A DNA stretch of 64,000 bases, taken from Octopus sinensis (Eukaryota). The position numbers and the translations under genes are program-made. Location of the stretch: the NCBI RefSeq assembly GCF_006345805.1, contig NC_043007.1, positions 18,290,001-18,354,000 on the forward strand. The letters run 5' to 3'. Position 1 is the first letter of the stretch. Each line of letters opens with the position of its first letter. Below are positions 13,213 through 62,880 of the stretch, one piece after another. The notes under the pieces are model-generated. The model worked only from the letters and a program-made list of their open reading frames with translations. It was not told the origin of the DNA and did not search any database.

Positions 13213-13441
13213 AGGAATGTATTCTTCAAGCCTTCCATCTGGGAAGGCACCAAACAATTTGGGGCCAAGACACTTTTCTGAAAGAATAGCAAATATTACA
13301 GAGTTTCTCACAACAAAGCCAGCACTTGTCTTCGCAATGTGTCCATACACTCGTAGTAGTACTTTACGTGGTTCATCTGGCCTCAATACTGGAATTTCAT
13401 TTGGAAGAGAACAAATATACAGATAATTGGTCAGTCCACCA
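13213..13441 (-). CDS. CHKA: Choline kinase exon 2 (GGLTNYLYICSLP...VLLRVYG...LGPKLFGAFPDGRLEEYIP)
   Basis: Acceptor tttttccag|T, donor CCT|GTAAGA, 229 bp; ATP-loop GGLxN, VLLRxYG and LGPKLxGxFxxGRLEEYIP family motifs. Confidence 0.97.
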
Positions 13442-18730: not shown

Positions 18731-18901
18731 TCATCATCATCATCAACATCATTTAACATCCGTTTTCGATGCTGGCATGGGTTGGATGGCTTGATAGGAG
18801 CTGGTAAAGCCAAGGGATGCACCAGGTTCTGTAGTATGTTTCGATTTGGTTTCTACAGCTGGATGCCTTCCTAACACCAACCACTTTACAGAGTGTACTG
18901 G
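18731..18901 (-). mobile_element. 3' terminus of an RTE-type LINE contiguous with the array
   Basis: (CAT)n tail, tttaacatccgttttcgatgctggcatggg and ctggatgccttcctaacaccaaccac, shared with other LINE 3' ends in the window. Confidence 0.85.
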
Positions 18902-21900
18902 GTGATTTTTATGTGGCACCATCACCAGTGCTTTTTACGTGGCACCGGCACCAGTGCTATTTACGTGGCACCAGCACCAGTGCTTTTTACATGGCACCAG
19001 TGCCTTTTACGTGGCACCAGCACCAGTGCTTTTTACATGGCACTAGTGCCTTTTACGTGGCACCAGCACCAGTGCTTTTTACATGGCACCAGCACCAGTG
19101 CTTTTTACATGGCACTAGTGCTTTTTATGTGGCACCAGCACCAGTGCTTTTTACATGGCACCAGCACCAGTGCTTTTTACATGGCACTAGTGCTTTTTAT
19201 GTGGCACCAGCACCAGTGCTTTTTACATGGCACCAGCACCAGTGCTTTTTACATGGCACCAGTGCTTTTTACATGGCACCAGCACCAGTGCTTTTTACAT
19301 GGCACTAGTGCTTTTTACATGGCACCAGCACCAGTGCTTTTTACGTGGCACTAGTGCTTTTTATGTGGCACCAGCACCAGTGCTTTTTACATGGCACCAG
19401 CACCAGTGCTTTTTACATGGCACCAGTGCTTTTTACATGGCACCAGCACCAGTGCTTTTTACATGGCACTAGTGCTTTTTATGTGGCACCAGCACCAGTG
19501 CTTTTTACGTGGCACCAGCACCAGTGCTTTTTACATGGCACCAGTGCTTTTTACATGGCACCAGCACCAGTGCTTTTTACATGGCACTAGTGCTTTTTAT
19601 GTGGCACCAGCACCAGTGCTTTTTACATGGCACCAGTACCAGTGCTTTTTACATGGCACTAGTGCTTTTTACGTGGCACCAGTGCTTTTTACATGGCACC
19701 AGTGCCTTTTACGTGGCACCAGCACCAGTGCTTTTTACATGGCACCAGTGCTTTTTACATGGCACCAGTGCCTTTTACGTGGCACCAGCACCAGTGCTTT
19801 TTACATGGCACCAGTGCTTTTTACATGGCACCAGTGCCTTTTACATGGCACCAGTACCAGTGCTTTTTACATGGCACCAGTGCTTTTTACATGGCACCAG
19901 TGCCTTTTACGTGGCACCAGCACCAGTGCTTTTTACATGGCACCAGTGCCTTTTACGTGGCACCAGCACCAGTGCTTTTTACATGGCACCAGTGCCTTTT
20001 GCGTGGCACCAGCACCAGTGCTTTTTACATGGCACCAGTGCTTTTTACATGGCACCAGTGCCTTTTACATGGCACCAGTACCAGTGCTTTTTACATGGCA
20101 CCAGTGCTTTTTACATGGCACCAGCACCAGTGCTTTTTACATGGCACTAGTGCGTTTTACGTGGCACCAGCACCAGTGCTTTTTACATGGCACTAGTGCT
20201 TTTTACATGGCACTAGTGCTTTTTACGTGGCACCAGCACCAGTGCTTTTTACATGGCACCAGCACCAGTGCTTTTTACGTGGCACTAGTGCTTTTTACAT
20301 GGCACCAGCACCAGTGCTTTTTACATGGCACCAGCACCAGTGCTTTTTACATGGCACCAGTACCAGTGCTTTTTACATGGCACTAGTGCTTTTTACGTGG
20401 CACCAGCACCAGTGCTTTTTACATGGCACCAGCACCAGTGCTTTTTACATGGCACTAGTGCTTTTTACATGGCACCAGCACCAGTGCTTTTTACATGGCA
20501 CTAGTGCTTTTTACATGGCACCAGCACCAGTGCTTTTTACATGGCACTAGTGCTTTTTACATGGCACCAGCACCAGTGCTTTTTACATGGCACCAGTACC
20601 AGTGCTTTTTACATGGCACTAGTGCTTTTTACGTGGCACCAGCACCAGTGCTTTTTACATGGCACTAGTGCTTTTTACATGGCACCAGCACCAGTGCTTT
20701 TTACATGGCACCAGTGCTTTTTACGTGGCACCAGCACCAGTGCTTTTTACATGGCACCAGCACCAGTGCTTTTTACATGGCACCAGTGCTTTTTACGTGG
20801 CACCAGCACAAGTGCTTTTTACATGGCACCAGCACCAGTGCTTTTTACATGGCACTAGTGCTTTTTACATGGCACCAGCACCAGTGCTTTTTACATGGCA
20901 CTAGTGCTTTTTACGTGGCACCAGCACCAGTGCTTTTTACATGGCACTAGTGCTTTTTACATGGCACCAGCACCAGTGCTTTTTACATGGCACCAGTGCT
21001 TTTTACATGGCACCAGTACCAGTGCTTTTTACATGGCACCAGTGCTTTTTACATGGCACCAGCACCAGTGCTTTTTACATGGCACTAGTGCTTTTTACAT
21101 GGCACCAGCACCAGTGCTTTTTACATGGCACCAGTGCTTTTTACGTGGCACCAGCACCAGTGCTTTTTACATGGCACCAGCACCAGTGCTTTTTACATGG
21201 CACCAGCACCAGTGCTTTTTACATGGCACCAGTGCTTTTTACGTGGCACCAGCACCAGTGCTTTTTACATGGCACCAGCACCAGTGCTTTTTACATGGCA
21301 CCAGCACCAGTGCTTTTTACATGGCACCAGCACCAGTGCTTTTTACATGGCACCAGTGCTTTTTACGTGGCACCAGCACCAGTGCTTTTTACGTGGCACC
21401 AGCACCAGTGCTTTTTACGTGGCACCAGCACCAGTGCTTTTTACATGGCACCAGCACCAGTGCTTTTTACGTGGCACCAGCACCAGTGCTTTTTACATGG
21501 CACCAGCACCAGTGCTTTTTACATGGCACCAGTGCTTTTTACGTGGCACCAGCACCAGTGCTTTTTACATGGCACCAGCACCAGTGCTTTTTACGTGGCA
21601 CCAGCACCAGTGCTTTTTACATGGCACTAGTGCTTTTTACGTGGCACCAGCACCAGTGCTTTTTACATGGCACTAGTGCTTTTTACGTGGCACCAGCACC
21701 AGTGCTTTTTACATGGCACTAGTGCTTTTTACATGGCACCAGCACCAGTGCTTTTTACATGGCACAAGTGCTTTTTACATGGCACCAGTGCTTTTTACAT
21801 GGCACCAGTGCTTTTTACATGGCACAAGTGCTTTTTACATGGCACCAGTGCTTTTTACATGGCACCAGTGCTTTTTACATGGCACCAGTGCTTTTTACAT

Positions 21901-24900
21901 GGCACCAGCACCAGTGCTTTTTACATGGCACAAGTGCTTTTTACATGGCACCAGTGCTTTTTACATGGCACCAGTGCTTTTTACATGGCACCAGTGCTTT
22001 TTACATGGCACAAGTGCTTTTTACATGGCACCAGTGCTTTTTACATGGCACCAGTGCTTTTTACGTGGCACCAGCACCAGTGCTTTTTACATGGCACCAG
22101 CACCAGTGCTTTTTACATGGCACAAGTGCTTTTTATGTGGCACCAGTACCAGTGCTTTTTACATAGCACCAGTGCTTTTTATGTGGCACCAGTACCAGTG
22201 CTTTTTACATGGCACTAGTGCTTTTTACATGGCACCAGTGCTTTTTACATGGCACCAGTGCTTTTTATGTGGCACCAGCACCAGTGCTTTTTACATGGCA
22301 CCAGTGCTTTTTACATAGCACCAGTGCTTTTTATGTGGCACCAGCACCAGTGCTTTTTACATGGCACCAGTGCTTTTTACATGGCACCAGTGCTTTTTAC
22401 ATGGCACCAGTGCTTTTACATGGCACAAGTGCTTTTTACATGGCACCAGTGCTTTTTATGTGACACCAGTGCTTTTTACGTGGCACCAGTGTTTTTACAT
22501 GGCACCAGCACCAGTGCTTTTTACATGGCACAGCACCAGTGCTTTTTACATGGCACCAGCACAGTGCTTTTTACATGGCACCAGTGCTTTTTACATGGCA
22601 CAAGTGCTTTTTATGTGGCACCAGTACCAGTGCTTTTTACATAGCACCAGTGCTTTTTACGTGGCACCAGTACCAGTGCTTTTTACATGGCACTAGTGCT
22701 TTTACGTGGCACCAGCACCAGTGCTTTTTACATGGCACCAGTGCCAGTGCTTTTTACGTGGCACCAGTGCTTTTTACGTGGCACCAGTGCTTTTTACGTG
22801 GCACCAGTGCTTTTTACATGGCACTAGTGCTTTTTACATGGCACAAGTGCTTTTTATGTGGCACCAGTACCAGTGCTTTTTACGTGGCACCAGTGCTTTT
22901 TACGTGGCACCAGTGCTTTTTACGTGGCACCAGTACCAGTGCTTTTTACATGGCACCAGTACCAGTGCTTTTTACATGGCACAAGTGCTTTTTATGTGGC
23001 ACCAGCACCAGTGCTTTTTACATGGCACTAGTACCAGTGCTTTTTACGTGGCACCAGTGCTTTTTATGTGACACCAGTGCTTTTTACGTGGCACCAGTGC
23101 TTTTTACATGACACCAGTGCTTTTTACGTGGCACCAGTGCTTTTTACGTGGCACCAGTACCAGTGCTTTTTACATGGCACCAGTGCTTTTTACATGGCAC
23201 CAGTGCCTTTTACATGGCACCAGTACCAGTGCTTTTTTCATGGCACCAGTGCTTTTTACATGGCACCAGCACCAGTGCTTTTTACATGGCACTAGTGCTT
23301 TTTACGTGGCACCAGCACCAGTGCTTTTTACATGGCACCAGCACCAGTGCTTTTTACGTGGCACTAGTGCTTTTTACATGGCACCAGCACCAGTGCTTTT
23401 TACATGGCACTAGTGCTTTTTACGTGGCACCAGCACCAGTGCTTTTTACATGGCACCAGCACCAGTGCTTTTTACGTGGCACTAGTGCTTTTTACATGGC
23501 ACCAGCACCAGTGCTTTTTACATGGCACCAGCACCAGTGCTTTTTACATGGCACTAGTGCTTTTTACGTGGCACCAGCACCAGTGCTTTTTACATGGCAC
23601 CAGCACCAGTGCTTTTTACGTGGCACTAGTGCTTTTTACATGGCACCAGCACCAGTGCTTTTTACATGGCACCAGTACCAGTGCTTTTTACATGGCACTA
23701 GTGCTTTTTACGTGGCACCAGCACCAGTGCTTTTTACATGGCACCAGCACCAGTGCTTTTTACATGGCACTAGTGCTTTTTACATGGCACCAGCACCAGT
23801 GCTTTTTACATGGCACTAGTGCTTTTTATGTGGCACCAGCACCAGTGCTTTTTACATGGAACTAGTGCTTTTTACGTGGCACCAGCACCAGTGCTTTTTA
23901 CATGGCACCAGTGCTTTTTTTTATGGCACCAGCACCAGTGCTTTTTACATGGCACCAGCACCAGTGCTTTTTACATGGCACTAGTGCTTTTTACGTGGCA
24001 CCAGCACCAGTGCTTTTTACATGGCACCAGCACCAGTGCTTTTTACATGGCACTAGTGCTTTTTACGTGGCACCAGCACCAGTGCTTTTTACATGGCACT
24101 AGTGCTTTTTACGTGGCACCAGCACCAGTGCTTTTTACATGGCACCAGCACCAGTGCTTTTTACATGGCACCAGTGCTTTTTACATGGCACCAGCACCAG
24201 TGCTTTTTACATGGCACTAGTGCTTTTTACATGACACCAGCACCAGTGCTTTTTACATGGCACCAGTGCTTTTTACATGGCACCAGCACCAGTGCTTTTT
24301 ACATGGCACTAGTGCTTTTTACATGGCACCAGCACCAGTGCTTTTTACATGGCACCAGTGCTTTTTACATGGCACCAGCACCAGTGCTTTTTACATGGCA
24401 CTAGTGCTTTTTACATGGCACCAGCACCAGTGCTTTTTACATGGCACCAGTGCTTTTTACATGGCACCAGCACCAGTGCTTTTTACATGGCACCAGTGCT
24501 TTTTACATGGCACCAGCACCAGTGCTTTTTACATGGCACTAGTGCTTTTTACATGGCACCAGCACCAGTGCTTTTTACATGGCACCAGTGCTTTTTACAT
24601 GGCACCAGCACCAGTGCTTTTTACATGGCACCAGTACCAGTGCTTTTTACATGGCACCAGTGCTTTTTATGTGGCACCAGCACCAGTGCTTTTTACATGG
24701 CACTAGTGCTTTTTACATGACACCAGCACCAGTGCTTTTTACATGGCACCAGTGCTTTTTACATGGCACCAGCACCAGTGCTTTTTACATGGCACCAGCA
24801 CCAGTGCTTTTTACATGGCACTAGTGCTTTTTACATGGCACTAGTGCTTTTTACATGGCACTAGTGCTTTTTACATGGCACCAGCACCAGTGCTTTTTAC

Positions 24901-27900
24901 ATGGCACTAGTGCTTTTTACATGACACCAGCACCAGTGCTTTTTACATGGCACCAGTGCTTTTTACATGGCACCAGCACCAGTGCTTTTTACATGGCACC
25001 AGCACCAGTGCTTTTTACGTGGCACCAGTACCAGTGCTTTTTACGTGGCACCAGCACCAGTGCTTTTTACATGGCACTAGTGCTTTTTATGTGGCACCAG
25101 CACCAGTGCTTTTTACATGGCACTAGTGCTTTTTACATGGCACCAGTGCCTTTTACGTGGCACCAGCACCAGTGCTTTTTACATGGCACCAGCACCAGTG
25201 CTTTTTACATGGCACCAGTACCAGTGCTTTTTTATGCGGCACCAGCACCAGTTCTTTTTACGTGGCACCAGCACCAGTGCTTTTTACATGGCACCAGTGC
25301 CTTTTACGTGGCACCAGCACCAGTGCTTTTTACATGGCACCAGCACCAGTGCTTTTTACATGGCACCAGTGCCTGTTACATGGCACCAGCACCAGTGCTT
25401 TTTACATGGCACCAGTACCAGTGCTTTTTACATGGCACTAGTGCTTTTTATGTGGCACCAGCACCAGTGCTTTTTACATGGCACCAGCACCAGTGCTTTT
25501 TACATGCACCAGTGCCTTTTACGTGGCACCAGCGCTTTTTACATGGCACCAGTACCAGTGCTTTTTACGTGGCACCAGTGCTTTTTATGTGGCACCAGCA
25601 CCAGTGCTTTTTACATGGCACTAGTGCTTTTTATGTGGCACCAGTACCAGTGCTTTTTATGTGGCACCAGCACCAGTGCTTTTTACATGGCACCAGTACC
25701 AGTGCTTTTTATGTGACACCAGCACCAGTGCTTTTTACATGGCACTAGTGCTCTTTATGTGGCACCAGCACCAGTGCTTTTTACATGGCACCAGTACCAG
25801 TGCTTTTTATGTGGCACCAGCACCAGTGCTTTTTACATGGCACTAGTGCTTTTTATGTGGCACCAGTACCAGTGCTTTTTACATGGCACCAGTACCAGTG
25901 CTTTTTACATGGCACCAGTACCAGTGCTTTTTATGTGGCACCAGCACCAGTGCTTTTTACATGGCACTAGTGCTTTTTATGTGGCACCAGTACCAGTGCT
26001 TTTTACATGGCACCAGTACCAGTGCTTTTTACATGGCACCAGTACCAGTGCTTTTTATGTGACACCAGCACCAGTGCTTTTTACATGGCACTAGTGCTCT
26101 TTATGTGGCACCAGCACCAGTGCTTTTTACATGGCACCAGTACCAGTGCTTTTTATGTGGCACCAGCACCAGTGCTTTTTACATGGCACTAGTGCTTTTT
26201 ATGTGGCACCAGTACCAGTGCTTTTTACATGGCACCAGTACCAGTGCTTTTTACATGGCACCAGTACCAGTGCTTTTTATGTGGCACCAGCACCAGTGCT
26301 TTTTACATGGCACTAGTGCTTTTTATGTGGCACCAGTACCAGTGCTTTTTACATGGCACCAGTACCAGTGCTTTTTACATGGCACCAGTACCAGTGCTTT
26401 TTATGTGACACCAGCACCAGTGCTTTTTACATGGCACTAGTGCTCTTTATGTGGCACCAGCACCAGTGCTTTTTACATGGCACCAGTACCAGTGCTTTTT
26501 ATGTGGCACCAGCACCAGTGCTTTTTACATGGCACTAGTGCTTTTTATGTGGCACCAGTACCAGTGCTTTTTACATGGCACCAGCACCAGTGCTTTTTAC
26601 ATGGCACCAGTACCAGTGCTTTTTTATGCGGCACCAGCACCAGTTCTTTTTACGTGGCACCAGCACCAGTGCTTTTTACATGGCACCAGTGCTTTTTACA
26701 TGGCACCAGTGCTTTTTACGTGGCACCAGCACCAGTGCTTTTTACATGGCACCAGCACCAGTGCTTTTTACATGGCACCAGTGCCTGTTACATGGCACCA
26801 GCACCAGTGCTTTTTACATGGCACCAGTACCAGTGCTTTTTACATGGCACTAGTGCTTTTTATGTGGCACCAGCACCAGTGCTTTTTACATGGCACCAGC
26901 ACCAGTGCTTTTTACATGGCACCAGTGCTTTTTACGTGGCACCAGCACCAGTGCTTTTTACATGGCACCAGTACCAGTGCTTTTTACGTGGCACCAGTGC
27001 TTTTTATGTGGCACCAGCACCAGTGCTTTTTACATGGCACTAGTGCTTTTTATGTGGCACCAGTACCAGTGCTTTTTATGTGGCACCAGCACCAGTGCTT
27101 TTTACATGGCACCAGTACCAGTGCTTTTTATGTGACACCAGCACCAGTGCTTTTTACATGGCACTAGTGCTCTTTATGTGGCACCAGCACCAGTGCTTTT
27201 TACATGGCACCAGTACCAGTGCTTTTTACATGGCACCAGCACCAGTGCTTTTTACATGGCACCAGCACCAGTGCTTTTTACGTGGCACCAGCACCAGTGC
27301 TTTTTACATGGCACCAGTGCTTTTTATGTGGCACCAGCACCAGTGCTTTTTACATGGCACCAGTACCAGTGCTTTTTACATGGCACCAGTACCAGTGCTT
27401 TTTACATGGCACTAGTGCTTTTTATGTGGCACCAGCACCAGTGCTTTTTACATGGCACCAGCACCAGTGCTTTTTACATGGCACCAGTACCAGTGCTTTT
27501 TACATGGCACCAGCACCAGTGCTTTTTACATGGCACTAGTGCTTTTTATGTGGCACCAGCACCAGTGCTTTTTACATGGCACCAGCACCAGTGCTTTTTA
27601 CATGGCACCAGTACCAGTGCTTTTTACATGGCACTAGTGCTTTTTATGTGGCACCAGCACCAGTGCTTTTTACATGGCACCAGTACCAGTGCTTTTTACA
27701 TGGCACCAGCACCAGTGCTTTTTACATGGCACCAGTGCTTTTTATGTGGCACCAGCACCAGTGCTTTTTACATGGCACCAGTACCAGTGCTTTTTACATG
27801 GCACCAGTACCAGTGCTTTTTACATGGCACTAGTGCTTTTTATGTGGCACCAGCACCAGTGCTTTTTACATGGCACCAGCACCAGTGCTTTTTACATGGC

Positions 27901-30900
27901 ACCAGTACCAGTGCTTTTTACATGGCACCAGCACCAGTGCTTTTTACATGGCACTAGTGCTCTTTATGTGGCACCAGCACCAGTGCTTTTTACATGGCAC
28001 CAGTACCAGTGCTTTTTACATGGCACCAGCACCAGTGCTTTTTACATGGCACCAGTGCTTTTTATGTGGCACCAGCACCAGTGCTTTTTACATGGCACCA
28101 GCACCAGTGCTTTTTACATGGCACCAGTGCCTTTTACGTGGCACCAGCACCAGTGCTTTTTACATGGCACCAGTACCAGTGCTTTTTACGTGGCACCAGT
28201 GCTTTTTATGTGGCACCAGCACCAGTGCTTTTTACATGGCACTAGTGCTTTTTATGTGGCACCAGTACCAGTGCTTTTTATGTGGCACCAGCACCAGTGC
28301 TTTTTACATGGCACCAGCACCAGTGCTTTTTACATGGCACCAGTGCTTTTTATGTGGCACCAGCACCAGTGCTTTTTACATGGCACCAGTGCTTTTTACA
28401 TGGCACCAGTACCAGTGCTTTTTACATGGCACCAGTACCAGTGCTTTTTACATGGCACTAGTGCTTTTTATGTGGCACCAGCACCAGTGCTTTTTACATG
28501 GCACCAGCACCAGTGCTTTTTACATGGCACCAGTACCAGTGCTTTTTACATGGCACCAGCACCAGTGCTTTTTACATGGCACCAGTACCAGTGCTTTTTA
28601 CATGGCACCAGTACCAGTGCTTTTTACATGGCACCAGTACCAGTGCTTTTTACATGGCACCAGTACCAGTGCTCTTTATGTGGCACCAGCACCAGTGCTT
28701 TTTACATGGCACCAGTACCAGTGCTTTTTACATGGCACCAGCACCAGTGCTTTTTACATGGCACCAGTGCTTTTTATGTGGCACCAGTGCCTTTTACGTG
28801 GCACCAGCACCAGTGCTTTTTACATGGCACCAGTGCCTTTTACGTGGCACCAGCACCAGTGCTTTTTACATGGCACCAGTGCTTTTTATGTGGCACCAGC
28901 ACCAGTGCTTTTTACATGGCACCAGTACCAGTGCTTTTTACATGGCACTAGTGCTTTTTATGTGGCACCAGCACCAGTGCTTTTTACATGGCACCAGTGC
29001 TTTTTATGTGGCACCAGCACCAGTGCTTTTTACATGGCACCAGTACCAGTGCTTTTTATGTGGCACCAGCACCAGTGCTTTTTACATGGCACCAGCACCA
29101 GTGCTTTTTACATGGCACCAGTGCTTTTTTGTGGCACCAGCACTTTTTACATGGCACCAGCACCAGTGCTTTTTACATGGCACCAGTACCAGTGCTTTTT
29201 ACATGGCACTAGTGCTTTTTATGTGGCACCAGCACCAGTGCTTTTTACATGGCACCAGTGCTTTTTATGTGGCACCAGCACCAGTGCTTTTTACATGGCA
29301 CCAGTACCAGTGCTTTTTACATGGCACTAGTGCTTTTTATGTGGCACCAGCACCAGTGCTTTTTACATGGCACCAGCACCAGTGCTTTTTACATGGCACC
29401 AGTACCAGTGCTTTTTACATGGCACCAGTACCAGTGCTTTTTACATGGCACTAGTGCTTTTTACATGGCACCAGTACCAGTGCTCTTTATGTGGCACCAG
29501 CACCAGTGCTTTTTACATGGCACCAGTACCAGTGCTTTTTACATGGCACCAGCACCAGTGCTTTTTACATGGCACCAGTGCTTTTTATGTGGCACCAGTG
29601 CCTTTTACGTGGCACCAGCACCAGTGCTTTTTACATGGCACCAGTGCTTTTTACATGGCACCAGTGCCTTTTACGTGGCACCAGCACCAGTGCTTTTTAC
29701 ATGGCACCAGCACCAGTGCTTTTTACATGGCACCAGTGCTTTTTATGTGGCACCAGCACCAGTGCTTTTTACATGGCACCAGTACCAGTGCTTTTTACAT
29801 GGCACTAGTGCTTTTTATGTGGCACCAGCACCAGTGCTTTTTACATGGCACCAGTGCTTTTTACGTGGCACCAGCACCAGTGCTTTTTACATGGCACCAG
29901 TACCAGTGCTTTTTACATGGCACCAGTGCTTTTTATGTGGCACCAGCACCAGTGCTTTTTACATGGCACCAGTGCTTTTTATGTGGCACCAGCACCAGTG
30001 CTTTTTACATGGCACCAGTGCTTTTTATGTGGCACCAGCACCAGTGCTTTTTACATGGCACCAGTACCAGTGCTTTTTACATGGCACCAGTGCTTTTTAT
30101 GTGGCACCAGCACCAGTGCTTTTTACATGGCACCAGCACCAGTGCTTTTTACATGGCACCAGTGCTTTTTACGTGGCACCAGCACTTTTTACATGGCACC
30201 AGTACCAGTGCTTTTTACATGGCACTAGTGCTTTTTATGTGGCACCAGCACCAGTGCTTTTTACATGGCACCAGTGCCTTTTACGTGGCACCAGCACCAG
30301 TGCTTTTTACATGGCACCAGTACCAGTGCTTTTTACATGGCACTAGTGCTTTTTATGTGGCACCAGCACCAGTGCTTTTTACATGGCACCAGTGCTTTTT
30401 ACATGGCACCAGCACCAGTGCTTTTTACATGGCACCAGTGCTTTTTATGTGGCACCAGCACCAGTGCTTTTTACATGGCACCAGTACCAGTGCTTTTTAC
30501 ATGGCACCAGTGCTTTTTATGTGGCACCAGCACCAGTGCTTTTTACATGGCACCAGCACCAGTGCTTTTTACATGGCACCAGTGCTTTTTATGTGGCACC
30601 AGCACTTTTTACATGGCACCAGTACCAGTGCTTTTTACATGGCACTAGTGCTTTTTATGTGGCACCAGCACCAGCGCTTTTTACATGGCACCAGCACCAG
30701 TGCTTTTTACATGGCACCAGCACCAGTGCTTTTTACATGGCACCAGCACCAGTGCTTTTTACATGGCACTAGTGCTTTTTACATGGCACCAGTACCAGTG
30801 CTCTTTATGTGGCACCAGCACCAGTGCTCTTTATGTGGCACCAGCACCAGTGCTTTTTACATGGCACCAGTACCAGTGCTTTTTACATGGCACCAGCACC

Positions 30901-31474
30901 AGTGCTTTTTACATGGCACCAGTACCAGTGCTTTTTACATGGCACCAGTACCAGTGCTTTTTACATGGCACCAGTGCTTTTTACATGGCACCAGTACCAG
31001 TGCTCTTTATGTGGCACCAGCACCAGTGCTTTTTACATGGCACCAGTACCAGTGCTTTTTACATGGCACCAGCACCAGTGCTTTTTACATGGCACCAGTG
31101 CTTTTTACGTGGCACCAGTGCCTTTTACGTGGCACCAGCACCAGTGCTTTTTACATGGCACCAGTGCTTTTTACATGGCACCAGTGCCTTTTACGTGGCA
31201 CCAGCACCAGTGCTTTTTACATGGCACCAGCACCAGTGCTTTTTACATGGCACCAGTGCTTTTTATGTGGCACCAGCACCAGTGCTTTTTACATGGCACC
31301 AGTACTAGTGCTTTTTACATGGCACTAGTGCTTTTTATGTGGCACCAGCACCAGTGCTTTTTACATGGCACCAGTGCCTTTTACGTGGCACCAGCACCAG
31401 TGCTTTTTACATGGCACCAGCACTTTTTACATGGCACCAGTGCTTTTTACGTGGCACCAGCACCAGTGCCTTTT
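18902..31474. repeat. ~12.5 kb minisatellite/satellite array; units GGCACCAGTGCTTTTTACAT (20 bp) and GGCACCAGCACCAGTGCTTTTTACAT (26 bp) plus variants
   Basis: Continuous tandem units with no unique spacers; roughly 500-550 units estimated from length. Confidence 0.99.
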
Positions 31475-32499
31475 TCTTTTCTTTTAAAGCTAAATATATA
31501 CAGGGTGGTATGAAAGTAGTTATGAAAAGAGAAAACACGTACAATACTCATTTATTAAGTATTATTATAGTTATGATAAATGTATTAATATGATTAATGA
31601 CACTGAAAATATCAAAAATGAAGCTAACTAATTTAATGTGCTAATAATTTTAATGAATTAAGTATTATGACATTGATGTGGTACTTACTGTTTACCTACT
31701 TTTGCACCCCTGCCCCAGGATATTAGGCTAACCACCAGAGATGGCCTCTGATTCTAAGACACAAAACATCTTGTTTTAAAACGTTCATATTTTGAATTAA
31801 AGACTATCCATCAGAATTTTATGCAAGAACCATTTTACATTGTGTTCCTCACACCAATTCAAGGTTTTCAAATTCCGGCACAAGGCCAGCAATTTTAAGG
31901 GAAGGAATTGTCAATTACATCAACCCTTGACAGAAAAAAATTTCATGCACGTGAAGCTTGCAGATTATGTTTTGATGGATATCATGAAATCAACCAAATA
32001 TGCAACCTACACTAGTTTTTAAAGTAAGCTCCTTATTTCAAAGGAATTTTAAATGAAAAAGGATAAAGCTCCTTTCTGTGTCATAGAGACTCATAGGGCT
32101 GGTTTACCAGATTCTCTTACATGGATGGGTCACTGATCTGTCACAGAAATACCCATTTTTTGCCAACTAAGTGGACTGGAGTAATATGAAATTAATTGTT
32201 TTGCTCAAGAAGACAAGACATTGCCCAGTACAGGAATTGAAACCACAATCTTATGATCATGAGTTCAACACACTAACCACTATGCCACAGACCTCCACAA
32301 TACACTCCAAAGCAACTTGAGAAAACATTTAGTTTGGACATTGACTTACAGCTCTTAATAAGGACTGATAGAAGCTAATAGTGACCCTTTAATTCATCTG
32401 CATTAGACAACCTTTCTAGCACATGTCACACGATGAAACACACACAGTGAAATAAATGTTTTAAATGACAATAAAACTAAAATTAATTAAAATATCTGG

Positions 32500-44804: not shown

Positions 44805-45175
44805 ATCATCATCATTGTCATTTAACGTCTGTTTTCCATGCTGGCACAGGTTGGGCAATTTGACAGGAGCCAGTAAGGTCAGAGGCTGCACCAGGCCCCA
44901 TTGTTGGTTTTGGCATGGTTTATAAGGCTGAATGCTCTTCCTAGTGCAAACCACTTTACAAATTGTACTGGGTGCTCTTTATGTGGCGCCAGCACCGGTG
45001 CTTTTCGATGGCACCAGCACCGGTGCTTTTCACTTGGCACCAACACTGGTGCTTTTCGATGGCACCAGCACCTGTGCTTTTCATATGGCACTAGCACCAA
45101 TGCTTTTCACATGGCACCAGCACCGATGCTTTTCACATGGCACCAGTACTGGTGCTTTTTATGTGGCACCAGCAT
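44805..45175 (-). mobile_element. LINE 3' end of the same subfamily as the array-bearing copy, with ~8 satellite units
   Basis: Shares ccactttaca..gtactgggtg with 18880-18905; units ggcaccagcaccggtgcttttcacat. Confidence 0.85.
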
Positions 45176-46176
45176 TGACAGGGTCACCAAGTAATTTGCA
45201 AGACAAAACTCTTTCAAGATATCAATTCTTCATGAGTAAAACAAGATGTCAAATATCTCAATCCTTAGTCATCTCCTTCATCTCTTCCTGATGTCAACTG
45301 CATGAAATGCAATAGTTTATTGGTACATCCCAATAATTCTGAAACAAGTCTAGCATTGTTCGTTTTCTCCTGTACTTGCCAAAATGATTAAACAATATTA
45401 GTCATCAAATTAATGTAGTCTTTTAACCCAGTGCAAAAAATCATTAATTTTTCATACTATGAAAAATTAATGATTCCAAACTTCAGCTTGGAATACCACT
45501 GAGTTAAAACTGCATCACACAACCATGCTACCATTTTGTATAGATTACAAGTTATTATATCCAGTTCTATTAGCAGCAGAAGATAACACATTTCCCTCAG
45601 TTGATAGCATTCACTACCTCTGTACACATATCACATATATAGAGAGAGTGTGTGTGTGTGTGAGAGAGTGCATATGCGTGTGAGAGAGTGCATATGCATG
45701 TGTGTGAGTACATGTGTATATGACAGGAACACTTTTGAATGTTAAAAACATAGTTAAAATGTTTGATAATTAAAATAGAAATTATTAGAAAAAAAAAAGC
45801 TCTTTTAACTGTTGGAATGTTAGAACCATAACTTTTTTTTGATTCTATGGAACTTAAATCTTTTAATTATGAGAATTATAGTTCAGCTATATATCTCAAT
45901 TCTTAGAGTTTCTCTAAATTGTTTAAAAATATTCCATCTTATTTTTTTTCTTGATATAAGAAATGTGAACGCTCCTAAATAAAGCACCAGTCTGCCTTGG
46001 GCCAAAATCTATCCTAAAATACACCATCCAACAACTTATGTTAAGTTTACCTACCGCTTCTTTTATGAGTCTTTAAAGACGAAAGCATTTGAAGTACCGA
46101 AAATTTAAGTTACTAAGAAACACTGAATATGTGATCGTAACACCATCATTATTGTTCTCAAGATAATCTTTCTAAT

Positions 46177-48854: not shown

Positions 48855-49073
48855 ATATATACATACATATATATATATATCCACATACATATACATGCAA
48901 ATATACATATATATATATATATATGCATATGCATACGCATATATATATATGCATATATACATATTTATTATTGACATATATACATAGGCATATATATATA
49001 TATATATACGCATATATACATATGCATACATACATACATACATATACATACACATATACACACACACATATAT

Positions 49074-49106
<33 letters not shown>

Positions 49107-50065
49107 CATATAAACACACACACATATATATATACATATATACACACACACGTATATATATACACATACACATATATATATATACACATACACATATATG
49201 CACACATACACATATATGCACACATATACATATATGCACACATACATACACACATATACATAAACACATATATACACATATATATACACATATATACATA
49301 TATATATACACATATATACATATATATATACATATATACACATATATATATATATACACATATATACATATATATATATACACATATATACATATATACA
49401 TATATATACACATATATACATATATACACATATATACACATATACACATATATACATATATATATATACATATATATACACACATATATACATATATATA
49501 TATACACATATATACATATATATATATACACATATATACATATATATATACACATATATACATATATATATACACATATATACATATATATATACACACA
49601 TATATACATATACACATATATACATATACACATATATACATATACACATATATACATATACACATATATACATATACACATATATACATATATATATATA
49701 CACATATATACATATATATATACACATATACACATATATATATATACACATATACACACATATATATATATACACATATATACACACATATATATATATA
49801 CACATATACACATATATATATATACACACATACACATATATATATACACATATATATACACACACATATACACATATATATATATACACACATATACACA
49901 CATATATATATACACACATATACACATATATATATATACACACACATATACACATACACATATACACACATATATACACACACACATATACACACATATA
50001 TACACACACATATACATATATATATACACACATAAAGATATAAATATACACACAAATATACATAT
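48855..50065. repeat. ~1.2 kb compound (TA)n/(CA)n microsatellite
   Basis: Almost pure alternating purine-pyrimidine sequence. Confidence 0.97.
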
Positions 50066-52037: not shown

Positions 52038-52448
52038 TAAATTTACGGTTATACCAATAATAATTGTAGCACTTGGTTTTATAAGTAAATGCCTAACTGT
52101 CAGTCTGGGTAAGCTTGATTTTTTAGAAAAAGAAATCAACCATCTAACTGGGAGATTACAAATACAATCTGGAAGCCAAACGGTAAAATTATGCAAGTCT
52201 TTTCTCAGGTTTAAACTGTGACATTGTTTCCATTATCTACATTCAATATCAACAACTAGATTTTGCAACCACTGTTTCTATGGAAATATATTTATTATTT
52301 TTCTAGCATATCAAAGAAACATAATTTTATACTACATATATTAATTATATCTGTCTATTATTATTAATTTCCTCAAATATCATGGAGTTTGTATTTGTAA
52401 ATGATTAAAAATAGAAGAGAAACATACATACACATAAAAGAAAAGACT

Positions 52449-52815
52449 GCACTGGTTTGGTTACGTGATGTGGATGGATGAGGACAGTTGCTTAAAGAAA
52501 TGCCGATCACTTAAAATGGAGGGAAGTTGTGGAAGAGGGAGACCCAGGAAGATATGGGATGAAGTACTGAAAGTTGATCTCAAAATGATGAGCCTTATGA
52601 AGGAGATGACAGAGGACTGAAATATGCAGCACGTTGTTTGTACTTATGAAGACCTGCCCATGACAACAGAATTGATAGCCTAAAACCAAGGTGCTATGTA
52701 AAAAGTATTCATGTTGGAGCTAATGCCATGTAAAAAGCACTGGTGCCAGCGCCACGTAAAAAGCATTGATGCTGGAGCCACATAAAAAGTACCGGTAATG
52801 GTGCTATGTAAAAAG
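52449..52815 (+). mobile_element. RTE LINE C-terminal fragment followed by ~5 copies of the satellite unit
   Basis: LHWFGYVMWMDEDSCLKKCRSLKMEGSCGRGRPRKIWDEVLK; downstream gccatgtaaaaagcactggtgcc is the reverse complement of the array unit. Confidence 0.85.
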
Positions 52816-53109
52816 CACCATTTTTCAGTGTATTTCAACCAGAAAAATGTCCACTTAAAGAGAATAACAAGCTACATAATGCAAAATTTTTACTTTTCAA
52901 AAATTCCAATTTTAAAGGGTCGAAACAAACCCGAGCAGCGCTGGGCGATACTGCTAGTTTTAGCTAAATGGAACAGGGAACCGATACAACTGTGTTTACT
53001 GGATACTAAAAAATCCTTGCTTGCATGTGGACAAAGCAGTTGATTCACTGCAAATCAATATCTGCTATGGAGTGTCAACAAAAAGTTTAATCAAACTATT
53101 TTCCTTTGA

Positions 53110-54849: not shown

Positions 54850-55950
54850 TTTTTTACTGGCTTCAGTCATTGGACTGTGGCCACGCTGGGGCACCATCTT
54901 GAATTTTTTTAGTTGAATGAATTGACCCCAGTACTCATTTCTAAGCCTGGTACTTATTCTCACAATCCCTTTGGCTGAACTGCTAAGTTACAGCGACGTA
55001 AACACACCAACACCGGTTGCCAAGGGGTGATGAGGAAACAAACAGACACAAAGACACATACATATATATATATATATCCAAGCGTGATCGATGCCAGAGC
55101 GGCTAACTGGCTTCCATGCCGGTGGCATGTAGGAAGCACCATTCAAGCGAGATCGTTACCAGCATCGCCTTACTGGCACCTGTGCCGTTGGCATGTGTAA
55201 AAAGATACGAGCGAGGCCGTTGCCAGCATCGCCTTACTGGCACCTGTAAAAAGATATGAGCGAGGTCGTTGCCAGTACCGCCTGACTGGCCCCCGTGCCG
55301 GTGGCACGTAAAAGCACCCACTACACTCTCGGAGTGGTTGGCGTTAGGAAGGGCATCCAGCTGTACAAACTCTGCCAGATCAAGACTGGAGCCTGGTGCA
55401 GCCATCTGGTTCACCAGCCCTCAGTCAAAATCGTCCAACCCATGCTAGCATGGAAAGCGGACATTAAACGATGATGATGATATATATCATCATCATCATC
55501 ATCGTTTAACGTCCGTTTTCCATGCTAGCATGGGTTGGACGGTTCTACTGGGGTCTGTGAAGCCAGAAGGCTTCATCAGGCCCAGTCAAATCTGGCAGTG
55601 TTTCTACGGCTGGATGCCCTTCCTAATGCCAACCACTCCGTGAGTGTAGTGGGTGCTTTTTACGTGCCACCCGCACAGGTGCCAGACGAGCTGGCAAACG
55701 GCCACGAACGGATGGTGCTTTTTATGTGCCACCGGCACGAGGGCCAGGCAGGGCTGGCAACGGACAAGGACGGATGGTGCTTTTTATATGATGGGCTTCT
55801 TCCAGTTTCCATCTACCAAATCCACTCACAAGGCTTTAGTTGGCCCGAGGCTATAGCAGAGGACACTCACCCAAGGTGCCATGCAGTGGGACTGAACCTA
55901 GGAACCATGTAATTGGGAAGCAAGCGTCTTACCATGCAGCCACTCCTACA
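54850..55950 (-). mobile_element. SINE family A split by the LINE pair inserted in its internal microsatellite
   Basis: 3' half at 54850-55055 and 5' half at 55786-55950 in the same orientation. Confidence 0.7.
55075..55785. mobile_element. Two RTE LINE 3' ends joined tail-to-tail (+ 55075-55480, - 55487-55785)
   Basis: ...ttaaacgatgatgatga tatatat catcatcatcatcatcgtttaac... Confidence 0.9.
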
Positions 55951-57030: not shown

Positions 57031-57052
57031 AATATATATATATATATATATA

Positions 57053-57781
57053 TCATCATCATCATTTAACGTCCTCTTTCCATGCAGGCATGGATTGGAC
57101 GATTTAACTGAGAACTGGTGAACCAGATGGCTGCACCAGGCCCCAATCTGATCTGGCAGCGTTTCTACAGCTGGATGCCCTTCCTTATGCCAACCACTCT
57201 GAGAGTGTAGTGGGTGCTTTTACATGCCACCGACACAAGGGCTAGTCAGGCAGTACTGGCAACAGCCATGCTCAAATGGTGTTTTTTACGTGCCACCTGC
57301 ACAGGAGCCAGTCCAGCAGCACTGGCAATGACCTTGCTTAAATATTTTTCACATGCCAGTTGGTAACGATCACGCTCGAATGGTGCTTTTTACATGCCAC
57401 TGGCATGGAAGCCAGTTAGCTGCTCTGGCAACGATCACACTTGGATGGTGCTCTCAACAGGTCTTCGCAAGCAGAGTTTAGAGTCCAATGAGGGAAAGGT
57501 ACGCATAAGTGGGTTGGTTATACCCCTGGCATAGGCCACGGGTTATGGTCTCACTTGGCTTGCCAAGTTTTCTCAAGCACAGCATATTTCCAAAGGTCTC
57601 AGTCACTAGTCATTGCCTTGGTGAGGCCTAATGTTGGAAGGTCCTGCTTCACCACCTCATCCCAGGTCTTCCTGGGTCTACCTCTTCCCTCAAACGCTAG
57701 GGTGTGGCACTTTTTCACACAGCTATCCTCATCCATTCTCGTCACATGACCATACCAGCACAGTCGTCTCTCTTGCACACC
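57053..57781 (-). mobile_element. 5'-truncated RTE-clade LINE: RT-protein C-terminus plus 3'UTR and (GAT)n tail
   Basis: Minus-strand translation RRLCWYGHVTRMDEDSCVKKCHTLAFEGRGRPRKTWDEVVKQDL, then a repeat-bearing UTR and a tail at ~57055. Confidence 0.9.
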
Positions 57782-60700
57782 ACATATATATGTATATATA
57801 TATGTGTGTGTGTGAGTGTGTATCTGTGTTTACACCCCCGTAACATAGCGGTTCAGCAAAAGAGACCAACAGCATTGGCACTAGGCTTACAAAGAATAAG
57901 TCCTGGGGTCGATTTCTTTGACTAAAGGTGGTGCTCCAGCATGGCTGCAGTCAAAAGACTGAAACAAGGAAAAGAATATACACACACACCTTCACAACTT
58001 CTACACAGTTTCTATCTACCAAATTTGTCACAAAGCATTGGTAAACTGAAGTTTATAGACAACATTTGTCCAAGATGCCACACAGTGTGATCAACCGTGA
58101 AACGAGACAGCCATGCCAGAATGCTCAGTAAATTCTTTATTTTTACCAACACTGGAAGGATGAAAACTTGATTGATGGGGTTAAATGCAGAGACTAAAGG
58201 GCCATAACTAAGTAACACAAGATATTTTGTCAAATACTTTAACAATTCTACTAATGCACCATTCTTGTCTAGTTATATATTCTCATAAGAATATTTAATA
58301 AAAGCTAGAAGTCAAAGCAAAATAATAATTAGTTATGATTAAGCAAACCTATGATAAAATGTCCCAACTGTGGCTATTCTATGATACCCAGTTATGATAG
58401 AATCGAGAATTTCATTATCCAATGTGTCCTTCCATTTATTTAAAGATGATTAAATGTAGTTTGAGCAGAATTTGATTTATTTCTAGCAGATCAAGCAACT
58501 GCATAGAAAGTTCCCAACAATGGAACTGGTTAAAATTGTATCCAAAGCATATTCCCTCTCCCTGCTAAGCAGATTTAATAGAAACAAAGATATGTGATGA
58601 AATATTCGTGAATGATTTAGCATAGACCCAGTATTCCAGCTAAGCCATGCTCACCGGGGACAATCATGCCACGTAGAGAACAGCATAGCAAACAGGATCT
58701 GGCATCCAATGCCTTGTATATTATTAATTAAAGGCTGTTGTTTAACCCTAGGTCAGCCCTGACTGAGTAGATCCATGATCAAATGAGAATCCCATCCTGA
58801 TCATCTTGTTTGATCACCATCTCAAATGATCAAATTAAATTCCAGCAATGAAAATCTCATTTTGTTTTTATACCCCCAGACAATGTGTTTTTGTTATGCA
58901 TAAACTTGGAACAGAATGAACCTCATAACTTCTCTTCCTTTTATTGGCTGCTTAGCAATGCAGAGAGTCTTGTTAGAGTCTTGTTATTTTATCTTTCATG
59001 TTTCGGATATCAAAAACGTTTGTCAGATGAAAGAAAACAAAAACAAATGGAAATTATTGTTGTGTTGCTCATATGACGATGACTGGTTCTTGCAGTCATT
59101 GTTTTGAATTTGTAAATTTGTCTACTCACTTGTCTAAAGGATATTTAAAAAAATAATTATAATTTCTATTTTAAACAAACCATTATATTTCTGTCTGTTG
59201 TCAGTAAATCAAGTGGATATTAATAATATGATAGCCTTGTAATGTTCTCATTCCTAACTACAGAACATCTGCACTAGACTACTGTTCACACTTCCCAAAC
59301 CCCCCACACTTTAAATACAAACAGATAAACACGACTAGAGTTTAACTAGGGCTTAACCAACAACAGAAAGTTCAACATGGGATAGCTTTTCTATATGTTC
59401 GCCCGGCCTGTTAGCTGTCAAAGCTCCTTCAAGGAAACCCTGCCATGTAAAAAGATTAAAATAAAAAATAATAATAATAAAAGGAGGCCTTGGATTATGT
59501 CTTCAAGACGACCGGAAAAGTCTTCGATCGCAGGTCTCGGAAATGACTTGGAACTCAAAACCTGATGGTGGACTCGACCAGGAGAAAGAGAGAGCTTGTT
59601 GCGTCATAATTATTTGTTATTATAGGCATGAAGTCTCTCTTATGTCTGTAGGGAAAAGTAGGAAGTTGCATTAGGCTAAATCCATCAAATTCCAGGAGCT
59701 AAATTAATTTATATTTAAGTGGGGGAATCGTCGGTCGAATTATAATTGAACGTCCCTAAATATCTAGCTTAGCCAAGAGAGACACTAAGTAATATACTGG
59801 ATGTAAATAAATGCAAAAAACGTTAAATTGATCGATACGAGACAGAATCTAAACTGCCATCTGGAACTACTGACTTGAAGAACAACAAACAATCAACGTG
59901 GTGGTTGTTGAACCGAGCTAAACTCATAAAACAATTCTAAACACGACTGTCCGGTTTTTTCCTTTAAGCAAGGTGAAATCAGGACCACATTAACTAACAT
60001 GCATAAGACGGTAAGGTGTGATTCCAGAGACATTTGACAGCTATTTCTAGCATGCATAGGCTACAAAGGCGCTGTGAAAAATAAATTAATTGCGGCTGAT
60101 TTACTCGACCCAGTCATAACATATCCGTTTTATCGATACAGACGGGATGTAATAAAACCTCCAGATCAGCACTAAATGAGCAAAGGCATTCCACTTATGA
60201 TTATCGCATTTTTTAATTTAGACAGAATATTGAGGATCATATTTTTTTTAAGGGGATAGTGTGGTATGAGGAGATTTAGTTGCTATTTCTAGCAAGTCAT
60301 GTTTCGTAGAAGCTAGAAATAACAGCGCAAAAACAATGAGGTATCGTAACACAAAAAAAAAAAATAGACAAGATTGGTGAGGTGGATGCCTCCCATCAAG
60401 GACCCAATAGAGAGGAGAGAGGGATTCAAGGCATGGTAATAAAGGTTTTCTTTTTCGTTCCACAGCTCAAGCATGACAATAAACGATATGGTCTAAAAAC
60501 TCGACAGAGAGAAGCTTTATAAACCCGTATATCTCATGGCAGTGAACAACACATCTTGCTTCATTGCACAATCCACAAAAAAAGCAAGAATGAAGACATC
60601 TAGTTCACACTACACCATACCTATAGGTTTCTGCTAGCAGTGAAAATTCGTCTTTATCCTAAAATTACAAATTCTCTGTGTAAGTAACCCTTGTTGTGAG

Positions 60701-62238: not shown

Positions 62239-62357
62239 CTGAGTGGAACAATCTGAAATTCGTCTTCACTCAAAGTAGACCAGGTTCCACCAAGACATTC
62301 TTTGCACCAGTCATAGGCTTTTTTGTTAATGTTTACTAGGCACCTGTCGTCGCCCAT
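62239..62357 (-). CDS. CHKA: Choline/ethanolamine kinase, first coding exon (MGDDRCLVNINKKAYDWCKECLGGTWSTLSEDEFQIVPL-S)
   Basis: ATG at 62357 in aggATGG context; AYDWCKECLGGTW resembles the choline kinase N-terminal AYxWCxxxLGGxW motif; phase-2 donor AG|GTAATG joins exon 2 (AG+T=Ser). CHKA vs CHKB orthology is not resolvable. Confidence 0.9.
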
Positions 62358-62752: not shown

Positions 62753-62880
62753 CTTTGGCTTTTTTGTGGCAAACAACAACACTAGAAACGGTTAATGAAC
62801 ATACGGTGTCTACTAGCATCAGTCTAAACCGTGTATCATCGCAACTAACATTTTATACACTCGACACGATCAACACAATC
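62753..62880 (-). other. Candidate non-coding 5'UTR exon of the kinase gene
   Basis: Donor-like AAAG|GTAGGA at 62752; acceptor ttttag| at 62425 preceded by a long minus-strand pyrimidine tract; no transcript evidence and the 5' end is arbitrary. Confidence 0.4.

What the first reader, a model, noticed from the sequence alone, without database searches (positions are those of the whole stretch)
18731..31474. 12.5 kb satellite grown out of a LINE 3'UTR inside the kinase first intron
The array begins exactly where LINE copies carry their gtgctttttacgtg(g/c)cac repeat and is continuous with a minus-strand RTE tail at 18731-18901. One retrotransposon VNTR has apparently expanded to ~500+ units, about a quarter of the 48.8 kb intron. 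If general, LINE 3'UTRs act as dispersed seeds for new satellites. No LINE continuation is visible to the right of the array.
Basis: partly seen in the sequence, partly recalled or inferred. Interest (0 to 1): 0.8.

Follow-up and report, generated by a model that had tools for sequence, protein, structure and literature searches.

The report
Intronic minisatellite grown from LINE 3'UTR repeat
A short repeat carried in the 3' untranslated end of an octopus retrotransposon has grown in place to about 530 copies (12.6 kb) inside the first intron of a choline-kinase-like gene; it is a clear new example of a process already known from other organisms.

Summary
Window 18902-31475 is one uninterrupted 12,574-bp tandem array of about 530 units of 20 bp (GTGCTTTTTACATGGCACCA) or 26 bp (the same plus GCACCA). 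It makes up 25.8% of the 48,797-bp first coding intron of a minus-strand choline/ethanolamine-kinase gene.

Its left edge joins a 170-bp retroposon 3' tail ending in (ATG)n, at 18731-18901 on the minus strand. The first array unit falls in the same alignment column as the first internal repeat of nine other tail copies in the window.

The tail belongs to an old sub-lineage, which I call B. One tailed B copy (44805-45300) shares nine exclusive tail substitutions with it, and carries 7.4 units of 26 bp between the tail and the last ORF2 codons. A tail-less copy (52438-52870) has about 3-5 such units after an ORF2 end. So the seed is a LINE 3'UTR minisatellite. No LINE sequence and no target-site duplication lie to the right.

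Nested higher-order repeats (46 to 418 bp, some 100% identical) and amplified CpG-decay variants point to stepwise DNA-level growth in place.

RTE clade membership, genome-wide generality and true array length could not be tested. Satellites derived from retrotransposon 3'UTRs are well documented, so this is a new member of a known kind.

The parts
18731..18901 (-). 3' end of a 5'-truncated LINE, lineage B. It comprises an (ATG)n microsatellite terminus (read as ATC/CAT on the + strand, 18731-18753) and a ~170-bp 3' tail.
   Evidence: It is homologous to 9 other tails in the window. It shares 9 exclusive derived states with the LINE-B copy at 44805; the next best pair shares 3.
18902..31475 (-). 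Expanded 3'UTR minisatellite of about 530 units of 20 or 26 bp, written on the + strand as GTGCTTTTTAC(A/G)TGGCACCA[GCACCA]. It is sense-oriented with respect to both the LINE and the host gene on the minus strand.
   Evidence: TRF score 12598. Unit census and higher-order map. Lag analysis gives periods of 20, 46, 72, 92, 98, 346 (100% identical) and 418 bp. The core dinucleotide is CG in 80 units, CA in 359 and TG in 84.
31476..32150 (.). Right (element-5') junction and unique intron sequence. The array ends inside the T-run of a unit (GTGCC|TTTTTCTTTT...).
   Evidence: No similarity to the LINE 3'UTR or ORF2. No target-site duplication of 6 bp or more.
44805..45300 (-). Reference copy of LINE lineage B: tail, then 7.4 units of 26 bp (44984-45174), a spacer, and the last ~14 ORF2 codons with the stop. 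It is 5'-truncated.
   Evidence: Sequence. TRF. 45227-45281 matches the ORF2 end at 52652-52597 at 78.6%. The consensus unit is 24/26 identical to the array unit.
52438..52870 (+). Second LINE-B fragment: ORF2 C-terminus (..RLHWFGYVMWMDEDS..GRGRPRKIWDEV..*) followed by about 3-5 units of 26 bp (52690-52810). The tail is absent.
57052..57830 (-). LINE lineage A 3' end: (ATG)n, tail, 4 units of ~58 bp, then the ORF2 C-terminus.
   Evidence: Sequence. The ORF2 C-terminus is 78% identical to an Octopus vulgaris protein whose locus has the same layout.
55486..55950 (-). Non-autonomous (SINE-like) partner of lineage A: the same tail, 2.2 units of 62 bp, then a head shared with other SINE families.
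   Evidence: Sequence and TRF. ARAGORN does not call a tRNA, so a tRNA origin of the head is not shown.
13213..13441 (-). Exon 2 of the choline/ethanolamine-kinase-like gene.
   Evidence: Acceptor and donor sites. Pfam PF01633.
62239..62357 (-). First coding exon of the same gene (ATG at 62357). Intron 1 is 13442-62238.
   Evidence: Sequence. A homologue aligns across the junction. An orthologous exon lies in Logan contigs of a related species.

Best explanation
An old octopod LINE sub-lineage (B) carries a 26-bp minisatellite in its 3'UTR, between the ORF2 stop codon and a 170-bp tail that ends in (ATG)n.

Inferred history:
1. One copy, 5'-truncated within that minisatellite, inserted in sense orientation into intron 1 of a choline-kinase-like gene.
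2. The few original units then expanded at the DNA level, by replication slippage and unequal exchange or gene conversion, to about 530 units (12.6 kb).
3. Loss of one copy of the internal GCACCA duplication produced a 20-bp unit.
4. Mixtures of 20- and 26-bp units were amplified as higher-order repeats of 46 and 72 bp and upward, and later blocks of about 100-420 bp were duplicated.
5. Units whose CpG had decayed to CA or TG were swept to a majority.

The array most likely has no function. It is probably tolerated because its sense strand has no poly(A) signal and none of the strong splice-donor strings I searched for.

Shown directly: the homology, the collinearity, the copy-number contrast, the internal structure and the position in the intron. 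Inferred: the truncated insertion, the growth in place and the neutrality.
For: - The array is real and far above chance.
- It starts in the same alignment column as the internal repeat of 9 other copies.
- The tail shares 9 exclusive derived states with the LINE-B copy at 44805, against 3 for the next best pair. That copy has 7.4 units of 26 bp, 24/26 identical to the array consensus, followed by an ORF2 end. A tail-less LINE-B fragment at 52438 has about 3-5 such units after an ORF2 C-terminus.
- Every other copy has 8 units or fewer, so this locus is about 70-fold expanded.
- The first unit of both tailed B copies has the same ATGTGG form, and the three units next to the tail each carry private substitutions. 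Unhomogenised edges are expected of original units.
- Nested periods of 20, 46, 72, 92, 98, 346 (100% identity) and 418 bp indicate repeated DNA-level duplication.
- Only 80 of 528 units keep the ancestral CpG, against 359 CA and 84 TG, and 57 of those 80 lie in the tail-proximal half. CpG observed/expected is 0.12 in the array against 0.45 in the rest of the window.
- There is no AATAAA or ATTAAA and no GGTAAG, GGTGAG or CAGGT on either strand of the array.
- Retrotransposon 3'UTR repeats giving rise to satellites are documented (PMC9659126, PMC7004042). An octopus RTE has a 3'UTR made mostly of microsatellite (PMC9115989).
Against: - There is no target-site duplication and no LINE sequence on the right. 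The insertion boundaries and the truncation point are therefore inferred, not demonstrated.
- The two tailed B copies are only 72% identical to each other, so the sub-lineage rests on few copies.
- No orthologous locus, no second individual and no reads could be examined. Neither growth in place nor the true length is directly shown.
- DNA folding of the units gives no strong hairpin (z -1.3 to -1.9), so no specific slippage-promoting structure is supported.
Confidence: 0.78

Rival explanations
1. Assembly artefact. A real but much shorter repeat at this site was inflated or mis-joined by the assembler, so the 12.6-kb length, and hence the 'satellite', is not real.
For: Long low-complexity arrays are error-prone in assembly. 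Some internal blocks are 99-100% identical at lags of 346 and 418 bp, where copy number is hard to assemble. No reads could be examined.
Against: The array is not uniform. It has region-specific unit variants and higher-order patterns that change along its length. It has unique, well-defined junctions on both sides and no N. This pattern is typical of a long-read-resolved array rather than a collapsed or duplicated one.
Confidence: 0.1
2. The array existed first, or was expanded elsewhere. Either a LINE-B copy landed beside an existing array of the same unit, its cDNA 5' end joining by microhomology, or an already expanded source element was retrotransposed or stuttered during reverse transcription.
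For: A microhomology-mediated 5' junction would also look seamless. No target-site duplication delimits a single insertion.
Against: The left-most unit is positionally homologous to the first unit of the other tailed LINE-B copy. At 12.6 kb the array is far longer than an octopus LINE: the RTE-2_OV ORF is 3.3 kb with UTRs of about 0.6 kb (PMC9115989). All other copies have 8 units or fewer. Blocks at 100% identity and amplified CpG-decay variants indicate changes made in genomic DNA over time. This reading only moves the same origin back one step.
Confidence: 0.07
3. The array is a selected functional element of the kinase gene, for example an intronic regulator or an RNA that sequesters RNA-binding proteins. 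The sense RNA carries two YGCY motifs per unit.
For: Sense orientation within the pre-mRNA, large size, and absence of poly(A) signals and of the strong-donor strings searched.
Against: There is no evidence of conservation. The sequence evolves by turnover, as neutral minisatellites do. There is no coding potential: no protein homologues and no Pfam match. No stable structure is predicted.
Confidence: 0.03

Closest known systems
Satellites derived from tandem repeats in the 3'UTR of Ogre LTR-retrotransposons (PisTR-A in pea; Lathyrus sativus satellites; PMC9659126, PMC7004042)
   Same: A short, variable tandem repeat sits in the 3' untranslated region of a retrotransposon. Dispersed copies carry a few units, and some loci are amplified into long arrays still attached to element sequence.
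   Different: Those are plant LTR elements, with arrays reaching satellite abundance at many loci. Here the element is an animal non-LTR LINE, and only one expanded locus (12.6 kb, in an intron) is documented.
LINE 3'UTR-derived satellites: the common cetacean satellite (L1 3' end), chicken HinfI/CR1, and Drosophila 18HT from HeT-A/TART (table in PMC9659126)
   Same: The monomer is homologous to the 3' non-coding end of a non-LTR retrotransposon.
   Different: In those cases a larger segment of the element became the monomer and the arrays are heterochromatic or centromeric. Here a 26-bp sub-repeat that already existed in the UTR expanded, and the parent tail is still attached.
Microsatellite families associated with RTE retrotransposons (Tay et al. 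2010, as cited in PMC9115989; the RTE-2_OV 3'UTR is mostly microsatellite)
   Same: The 3' region of a LINE (said to be RTE clade) spreads repeat-prone sequence through the genome, including in octopus.
   Different: Those are 2-6-bp microsatellites of modest length. This is a 20/26-bp minisatellite with higher-order structure, grown to 12.6 kb. RTE membership of this LINE was not shown.
VNTR region of hominid SVA retroposons (from my own knowledge, not checked here)
   Same: An internal minisatellite of a non-autonomous retroposon varies in copy number between insertions and expands after insertion, often within introns.
   Different: SVA VNTR units are 35-50 bp and expansions are usually a few kb or less. 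The element family is unrelated.

Membership tests
Transposable-element-derived tandem array (retrotransposon 3'UTR repeat expansion) | The monomer is homologous to an internal segment of the element. | tested here: met
   The array consensus is 24/26 identical to the LINE-B repeat consensus at 44984-45174 and about 22/26 to the start of the 58-63-bp lineage-A unit.
Transposable-element-derived tandem array (retrotransposon 3'UTR repeat expansion) | The array is contiguous and collinear with the rest of the element. | tested here: met
   The tail at 18731-18901 abuts the array, and the array starts in the repeat column of the 10-copy alignment.
Transposable-element-derived tandem array (retrotransposon 3'UTR repeat expansion) | Ordinary copies carry only a few units in an untranslated region. 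| tested here: met
   Other copies have 2-7.4 units. In the B copies the repeat lies just downstream of the ORF2 stop, and in the tailed copy 44805 it lies between that stop and the tail.
Satellite DNA in the strict sense (abundant, multi-locus, long arrays) | Many loci or a high genomic abundance of the same monomer. | not testable with these tools
   No octopod genome could be searched. The metagenome scans hold no octopus DNA. A protein-space search and an exact look-up with array ORFs found nothing.
Minisatellite / VNTR | Tandem units of roughly 10-60 bp at a single euchromatic locus. | tested here: met
   Units of 20 and 26 bp inside an intron.
Minisatellite / VNTR | Copy-number variation between individuals. 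| not testable with these tools
   Only one haplotype is available.
RTE-clade LINE | The reverse transcriptase falls in the RTE clade, in a single ORF with an AP-endonuclease domain. | not tested
   The window holds only the last ~60 ORF2 residues. Homologues of that C-terminus include non-LTR ORF2 proteins with Exo_endo_phos and/or RVT_1 domains. That shows a LINE, not the clade.
RTE-clade LINE | A microsatellite 3' terminus and a SINE partner sharing the 3' tail. | tested here: met
   (ATG)n termini are present on all copies. Lineage A occurs both as a LINE (57052-57830) and as a SINE-like element (55486-55950) with the same tail and repeat. These features are compatible with RTE but not exclusive to it.
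Choline/ethanolamine kinase (host gene) | Pfam PF01633 domain. | tested here: met
   60.7 bits against a cut-off of 29 for the exon 1 + exon 2 peptide. The homologues carry PF01633.

The most novel reading that the evidence does not exclude
The repeat in the LINE/SINE 3' region is a general nursery of tandem arrays in octopod genomes. On this reading many long arrays, including intronic ones transcribed in sense, would descend from lineage A or B repeats, and retroposon-borne repeats would account for a sizeable share of octopus tandem DNA. In this locus one of three lineage-B copies in 64 kb has expanded. An unrelated SINE also forms tandem arrays: 183 bp x 2 in the window and 184 bp x 7 in O. 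vulgaris.
Probability: 0.25. Interest if true: 0.45.

Novelty: new member of a known kind. Interest (0 to 1): 0.3.

Why it matters
This locus catches the transition from a transposon-borne repeat to a long array with the parent element still attached. The seed (26-bp units in a LINE 3'UTR), unexpanded copies in the same 64 kb, and the product (12.6 kb with nested higher-order repeats and amplified CpG-decay variants) can be read side by side. Such intermediates are uncommon. I found no paper in the searched library that describes this unit or a LINE-derived array in a cephalopod.

It also shows that a quarter of a large octopus intron can be a single expanded repeat. That matters for annotation and for intron-size comparisons. 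The principle itself is established in plants, insects, birds and mammals.

Tried and rejected
1. Protein-space search with a 653-aa ORF translated from the array, to find other arrays. There were 8000 word candidates and none was significant.
2. Exact look-up of a 111-aa array ORF in public assemblies. Not on record.
3. Metagenome scans for a two-unit pattern and for the conserved tail core. Both gave zero hits, which means the collection holds no octopus DNA, not that the repeat is rare.
4. Orthologous intron. Only about 2-kb Logan contigs around exon 1 of a related species (81-85% identical) were retrievable. They are too short to reach the array.
5. Hairpin-driven slippage. DNA folding of the units is not better than shuffles (z -0.9 to -1.9), so I dropped it as a specific mechanism.
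6. Target-site duplication. None of 6 bp or more.
7. tRNA origin of the SINE head. ARAGORN finds no tRNA.
8. LINE clade. Homologues of the ORF2 C-terminus include non-LTR ORF2 proteins, but neither their names nor their domains give the clade.
9. Coding potential of the long + strand ORFs in the array. They exist only because the common unit has no stop codon on the + strand; stops there come only from variant units (TAA 0, TAG 87, TGA 11). They have no Pfam match and no homologues.
10. Full-text search for the unit and tail sequences in papers. No hits.
Full report

Yes. Tandem Repeats Finder reports a single array at 18902-31475 with period 26, 533 copies and score 12598. It also offers periods 46 and 72 for the same array. 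Only one match, at 8946-8963, lies outside the array.

Parsing at the unit start gives 209 units of 20 bp (GTGCTTTTTACATGGCACCA) and 306 of 26 bp (the same plus GCACCA). A few units are off by one base or could not be split. The array is 12,574 bp long, has no N and contains no inserted foreign sequence.

**2. Surroundings and host gene**

On the minus strand an ORF ends in ...DEFQIVPL at a GT donor (exon 1, ATG at 62357, last base 62239). A second exon follows a polypyrimidine tract and AG at 13441 and ends at a GT donor after 13213.

- The joined peptide matches Pfam Choline_kinase PF01633 at 60.7 bits against a cut-off of 29.
- Database relatives carry the same domain.
- One relative aligns without a break across the junction, including the junction serine.

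Intron 1 is therefore 13442-62238, or 48,797 bp, and the array is 25.8% of it. This confirms 'kinase first intron' and 'about a quarter of 48.8 kb'. I cannot exclude an untranslated exon further upstream, so strictly it is the first coding intron.

**3. The left flank is a retroposon 3' end**

Positions 18731-18901 read (ATC)n followed by about 170 bp. This stretch recurs about ten times in the window at 73-78% identity. Read in the element's own sense, the copy lies on the minus strand and ends in (ATG)n at 18731.

In a 10-copy alignment (A1) the first array unit falls in exactly the column where all other copies begin an internal tandem repeat that opens with GGTGCTTTTTA(C/T)GTG.

**4. LINE or SINE, and which repeat?**

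Two lineages are present.

Lineage A is the majority. Its copies are 80-92% identical to each other, and its unit is 58-63 bp long. The motif is only the first ~25 bp of that unit. Lineage A occurs in two forms:
- as a LINE 3' end: 57052-57830 has the tail, 4 units, then an ORF2 C-terminus ..RRLCWYGHVTRMDEDS..GRGRPRKTWDEV..*;
- as a SINE-like element: 55486-55950 has the tail, 2.2 units, then a head shared with other SINEs.

Lineage B contains the tail at 18731 and the copy at 44805. These two share nine exclusive derived states in the tail, and the next best pair shares three. The copy at 44805 carries 7.4 units of 26 bp (TRF) whose consensus is 24/26 identical to the array unit. After those units come a spacer and the last ~14 ORF2 codons, which are homologous to the ORF2 end at 52597-52652 (78.6%).

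The other fragment, 52438-52870, has an ORF2 C-terminus followed by about 3-5 units of 26 bp but no tail.

It belongs to an old sub-lineage rather than to the LINE copies in general.

The 26-mer corresponds to the first 26 bases of the long lineage-A unit. Going from one unit form to the other looks like a deletion (or insertion) between two GTGC motifs. That step is my inference.

**5. Organism**

The lineage-A ORF2 C-terminus is 78% identical to a 'hypothetical predicted protein' of Octopus vulgaris. The chromosomal locus of that protein shows the same ORF2-end / 3'UTR / long-unit repeat layout, together with further tails.

Logan contigs from another species align to the exon 1 region at 81-85% identity. 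The window is therefore from an octopod. I could not determine the species.

**6. Right edge**

The array ends inside the T-run of a unit (…CACCAGTGCC|TTTTTCTTTTCTTTTAAAG). The next 680 bp have no similarity to any LINE part in the window. No direct repeat of 6 bp or more flanks the tail-plus-array.

The simplest reading is a copy that was 5'-truncated within the minisatellite. A later deletion of the 5' part cannot be excluded.

**7. How did it grow?**

The array has nested structure:
- near the tail, 46- and 72-bp patterns (26+20, 26+26+20);
- at 21.7-23.1 kb, runs dominated by 20-mers;
- at 24.1 kb, a 46/92-bp pattern at 94-95% identity;
- in the distal half, longer blocks, including a 346-bp block repeated at 100% identity, a 418-bp block at 99%, and similarities at 1.3-1.5 kb lags.

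The 20-mer is the 26-mer minus one copy of the internal GCACCA duplication.

The ancestral ACGTGG core keeps its CpG in only 80 units. The two deamination products occupy 359 units (ACATGG) and 84 units (ATGTGG). Of the 80 CpG-bearing units, 57 lie in the tail-proximal half. CpG observed/expected is 0.12 in the array against 0.45 elsewhere in the window.

The three units next to the tail each have private substitutions. The first unit shares the ATGTGG form with the first unit of the copy at 44805. Unhomogenised edges of this kind are expected if these are the original units.

Together this indicates many rounds of DNA-level duplication at different scales, by slippage and unequal exchange or conversion. 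Growth continued after mutations had arisen in place. It does not look like a single event or a product of reverse transcription. Every other copy in the window has 8 units or fewer, so this locus is expanded about 70-fold.

**8. Consequences**

The element and the gene are on the same strand, so the pre-mRNA carries (UGGUGCUGGUGCCAUGUAAAAAGCAC)n. The array contains no AATAAA or ATTAAA and none of the strong donor strings GGTAAG, GGTGAG or CAGGT. This fits with the array being tolerated.

The long + strand ORFs, up to 653 aa, exist only because the common unit has no stop codon on that strand; the stops there come only from variant units (TAA 0, TAG 87, TGA 11). They have no homologues and no Pfam match. 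Single-strand folding of the units is not unusual. I see no evidence of function.

**9. Age**

The two tailed B copies are 72% identical to each other and about 70% to lineage A, so the insertion is old. By contrast, the identical internal blocks show that turnover within the array is recent.

**10. Comparison with what is known**

Satellites arising from retrotransposon 3'UTR tandem repeats are well documented:
- Ogre elements in pea and Lathyrus (PMC7004042; Macas et al. 2009 as cited in PMC9659126);
- LINE 3' ends in the cetacean L1 satellite, chicken CR1 HinfI and Drosophila HeT-A/TART 18HT (table in PMC9659126).

For octopus, the RTE-2_OV 3'UTR is reported to be mostly microsatellite. The same paper cites work on microsatellite families generated by RTE elements (PMC9115989).

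A recent detailed O. vulgaris repeat annotation does not discuss such arrays (PMC13282606). Full-text searches for the unit and tail sequences found nothing.

The finding is thus a clear new member of a known kind. It is unusually legible because the seed, the sister copies and the product all lie within one 64-kb window.

**11. What could not be done**

No octopod genome or read set was searchable. The following therefore remain untested:
- generality of the 'dispersed seed' idea;
- the true array length;
- polymorphism between individuals;
- the state of the orthologous intron in other species.

The RTE assignment is compatible with the (ATG)n terminus and the SINE partner, but no RT domain of this family was available.

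**Verdict**

Novelty is modest.

Noticed in passing
window 55300-55671: Two lineage-A retroposon 3' ends lie tail-to-tail and share one microsatellite (…GATGATGATGATATATATCATCATCATCATC…). One may have inserted into the (ATG)n terminus of the other, which would hint at microsatellite-primed targeting.
   Followed up: no
window 61313-61688; L003 16635-17923 (O. vulgaris OX597824.1): An unrelated octopus SINE family (…GGATGAAAGGCAAAGTC…, by eye the reverse complement of the L003 unit) forms tandem arrays of whole ~183-184-bp units: 2.0 copies at 97% in the window and 7.0 copies at 93% in O. vulgaris. This is a second route from retroposon to tandem repeat in these genomes.
   Followed up: partly
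window 48855-50067: A 1.2-kb AT/AC-rich low-complexity array (TRF periods 2, 24 and 26; GC 0.20 and GC skew -0.94 in that kilobase) lies in the same intron.
   Followed up: no
window 62880-63530: A CT-rich block with nested 74- and 97-bp tandem duplications lies about 0.5-1.2 kb upstream of the kinase ATG, possibly in the promoter or 5'UTR region. The related species' contig aligns here at only 74-85%, with multiple offsets.
   Followed up: no
window 9442-9744 (+): This ORF ends in …FWPPNSPVCNPMDY, which from memory resembles the C-terminal part of Tc1/mariner transposases. Pfam gave no match at E <= 0.01. It lies next to the retroposon tail at 8946-9133.
   Followed up: partly
window 51405-51634, 55652-55787, 55189-55290, 57200-57440: The long-unit (49-63 bp) repeat of lineage A varies from about 2 to 4 copies between insertions and in unit length. 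The repeat is unstable in ordinary copies too.
   Followed up: partly
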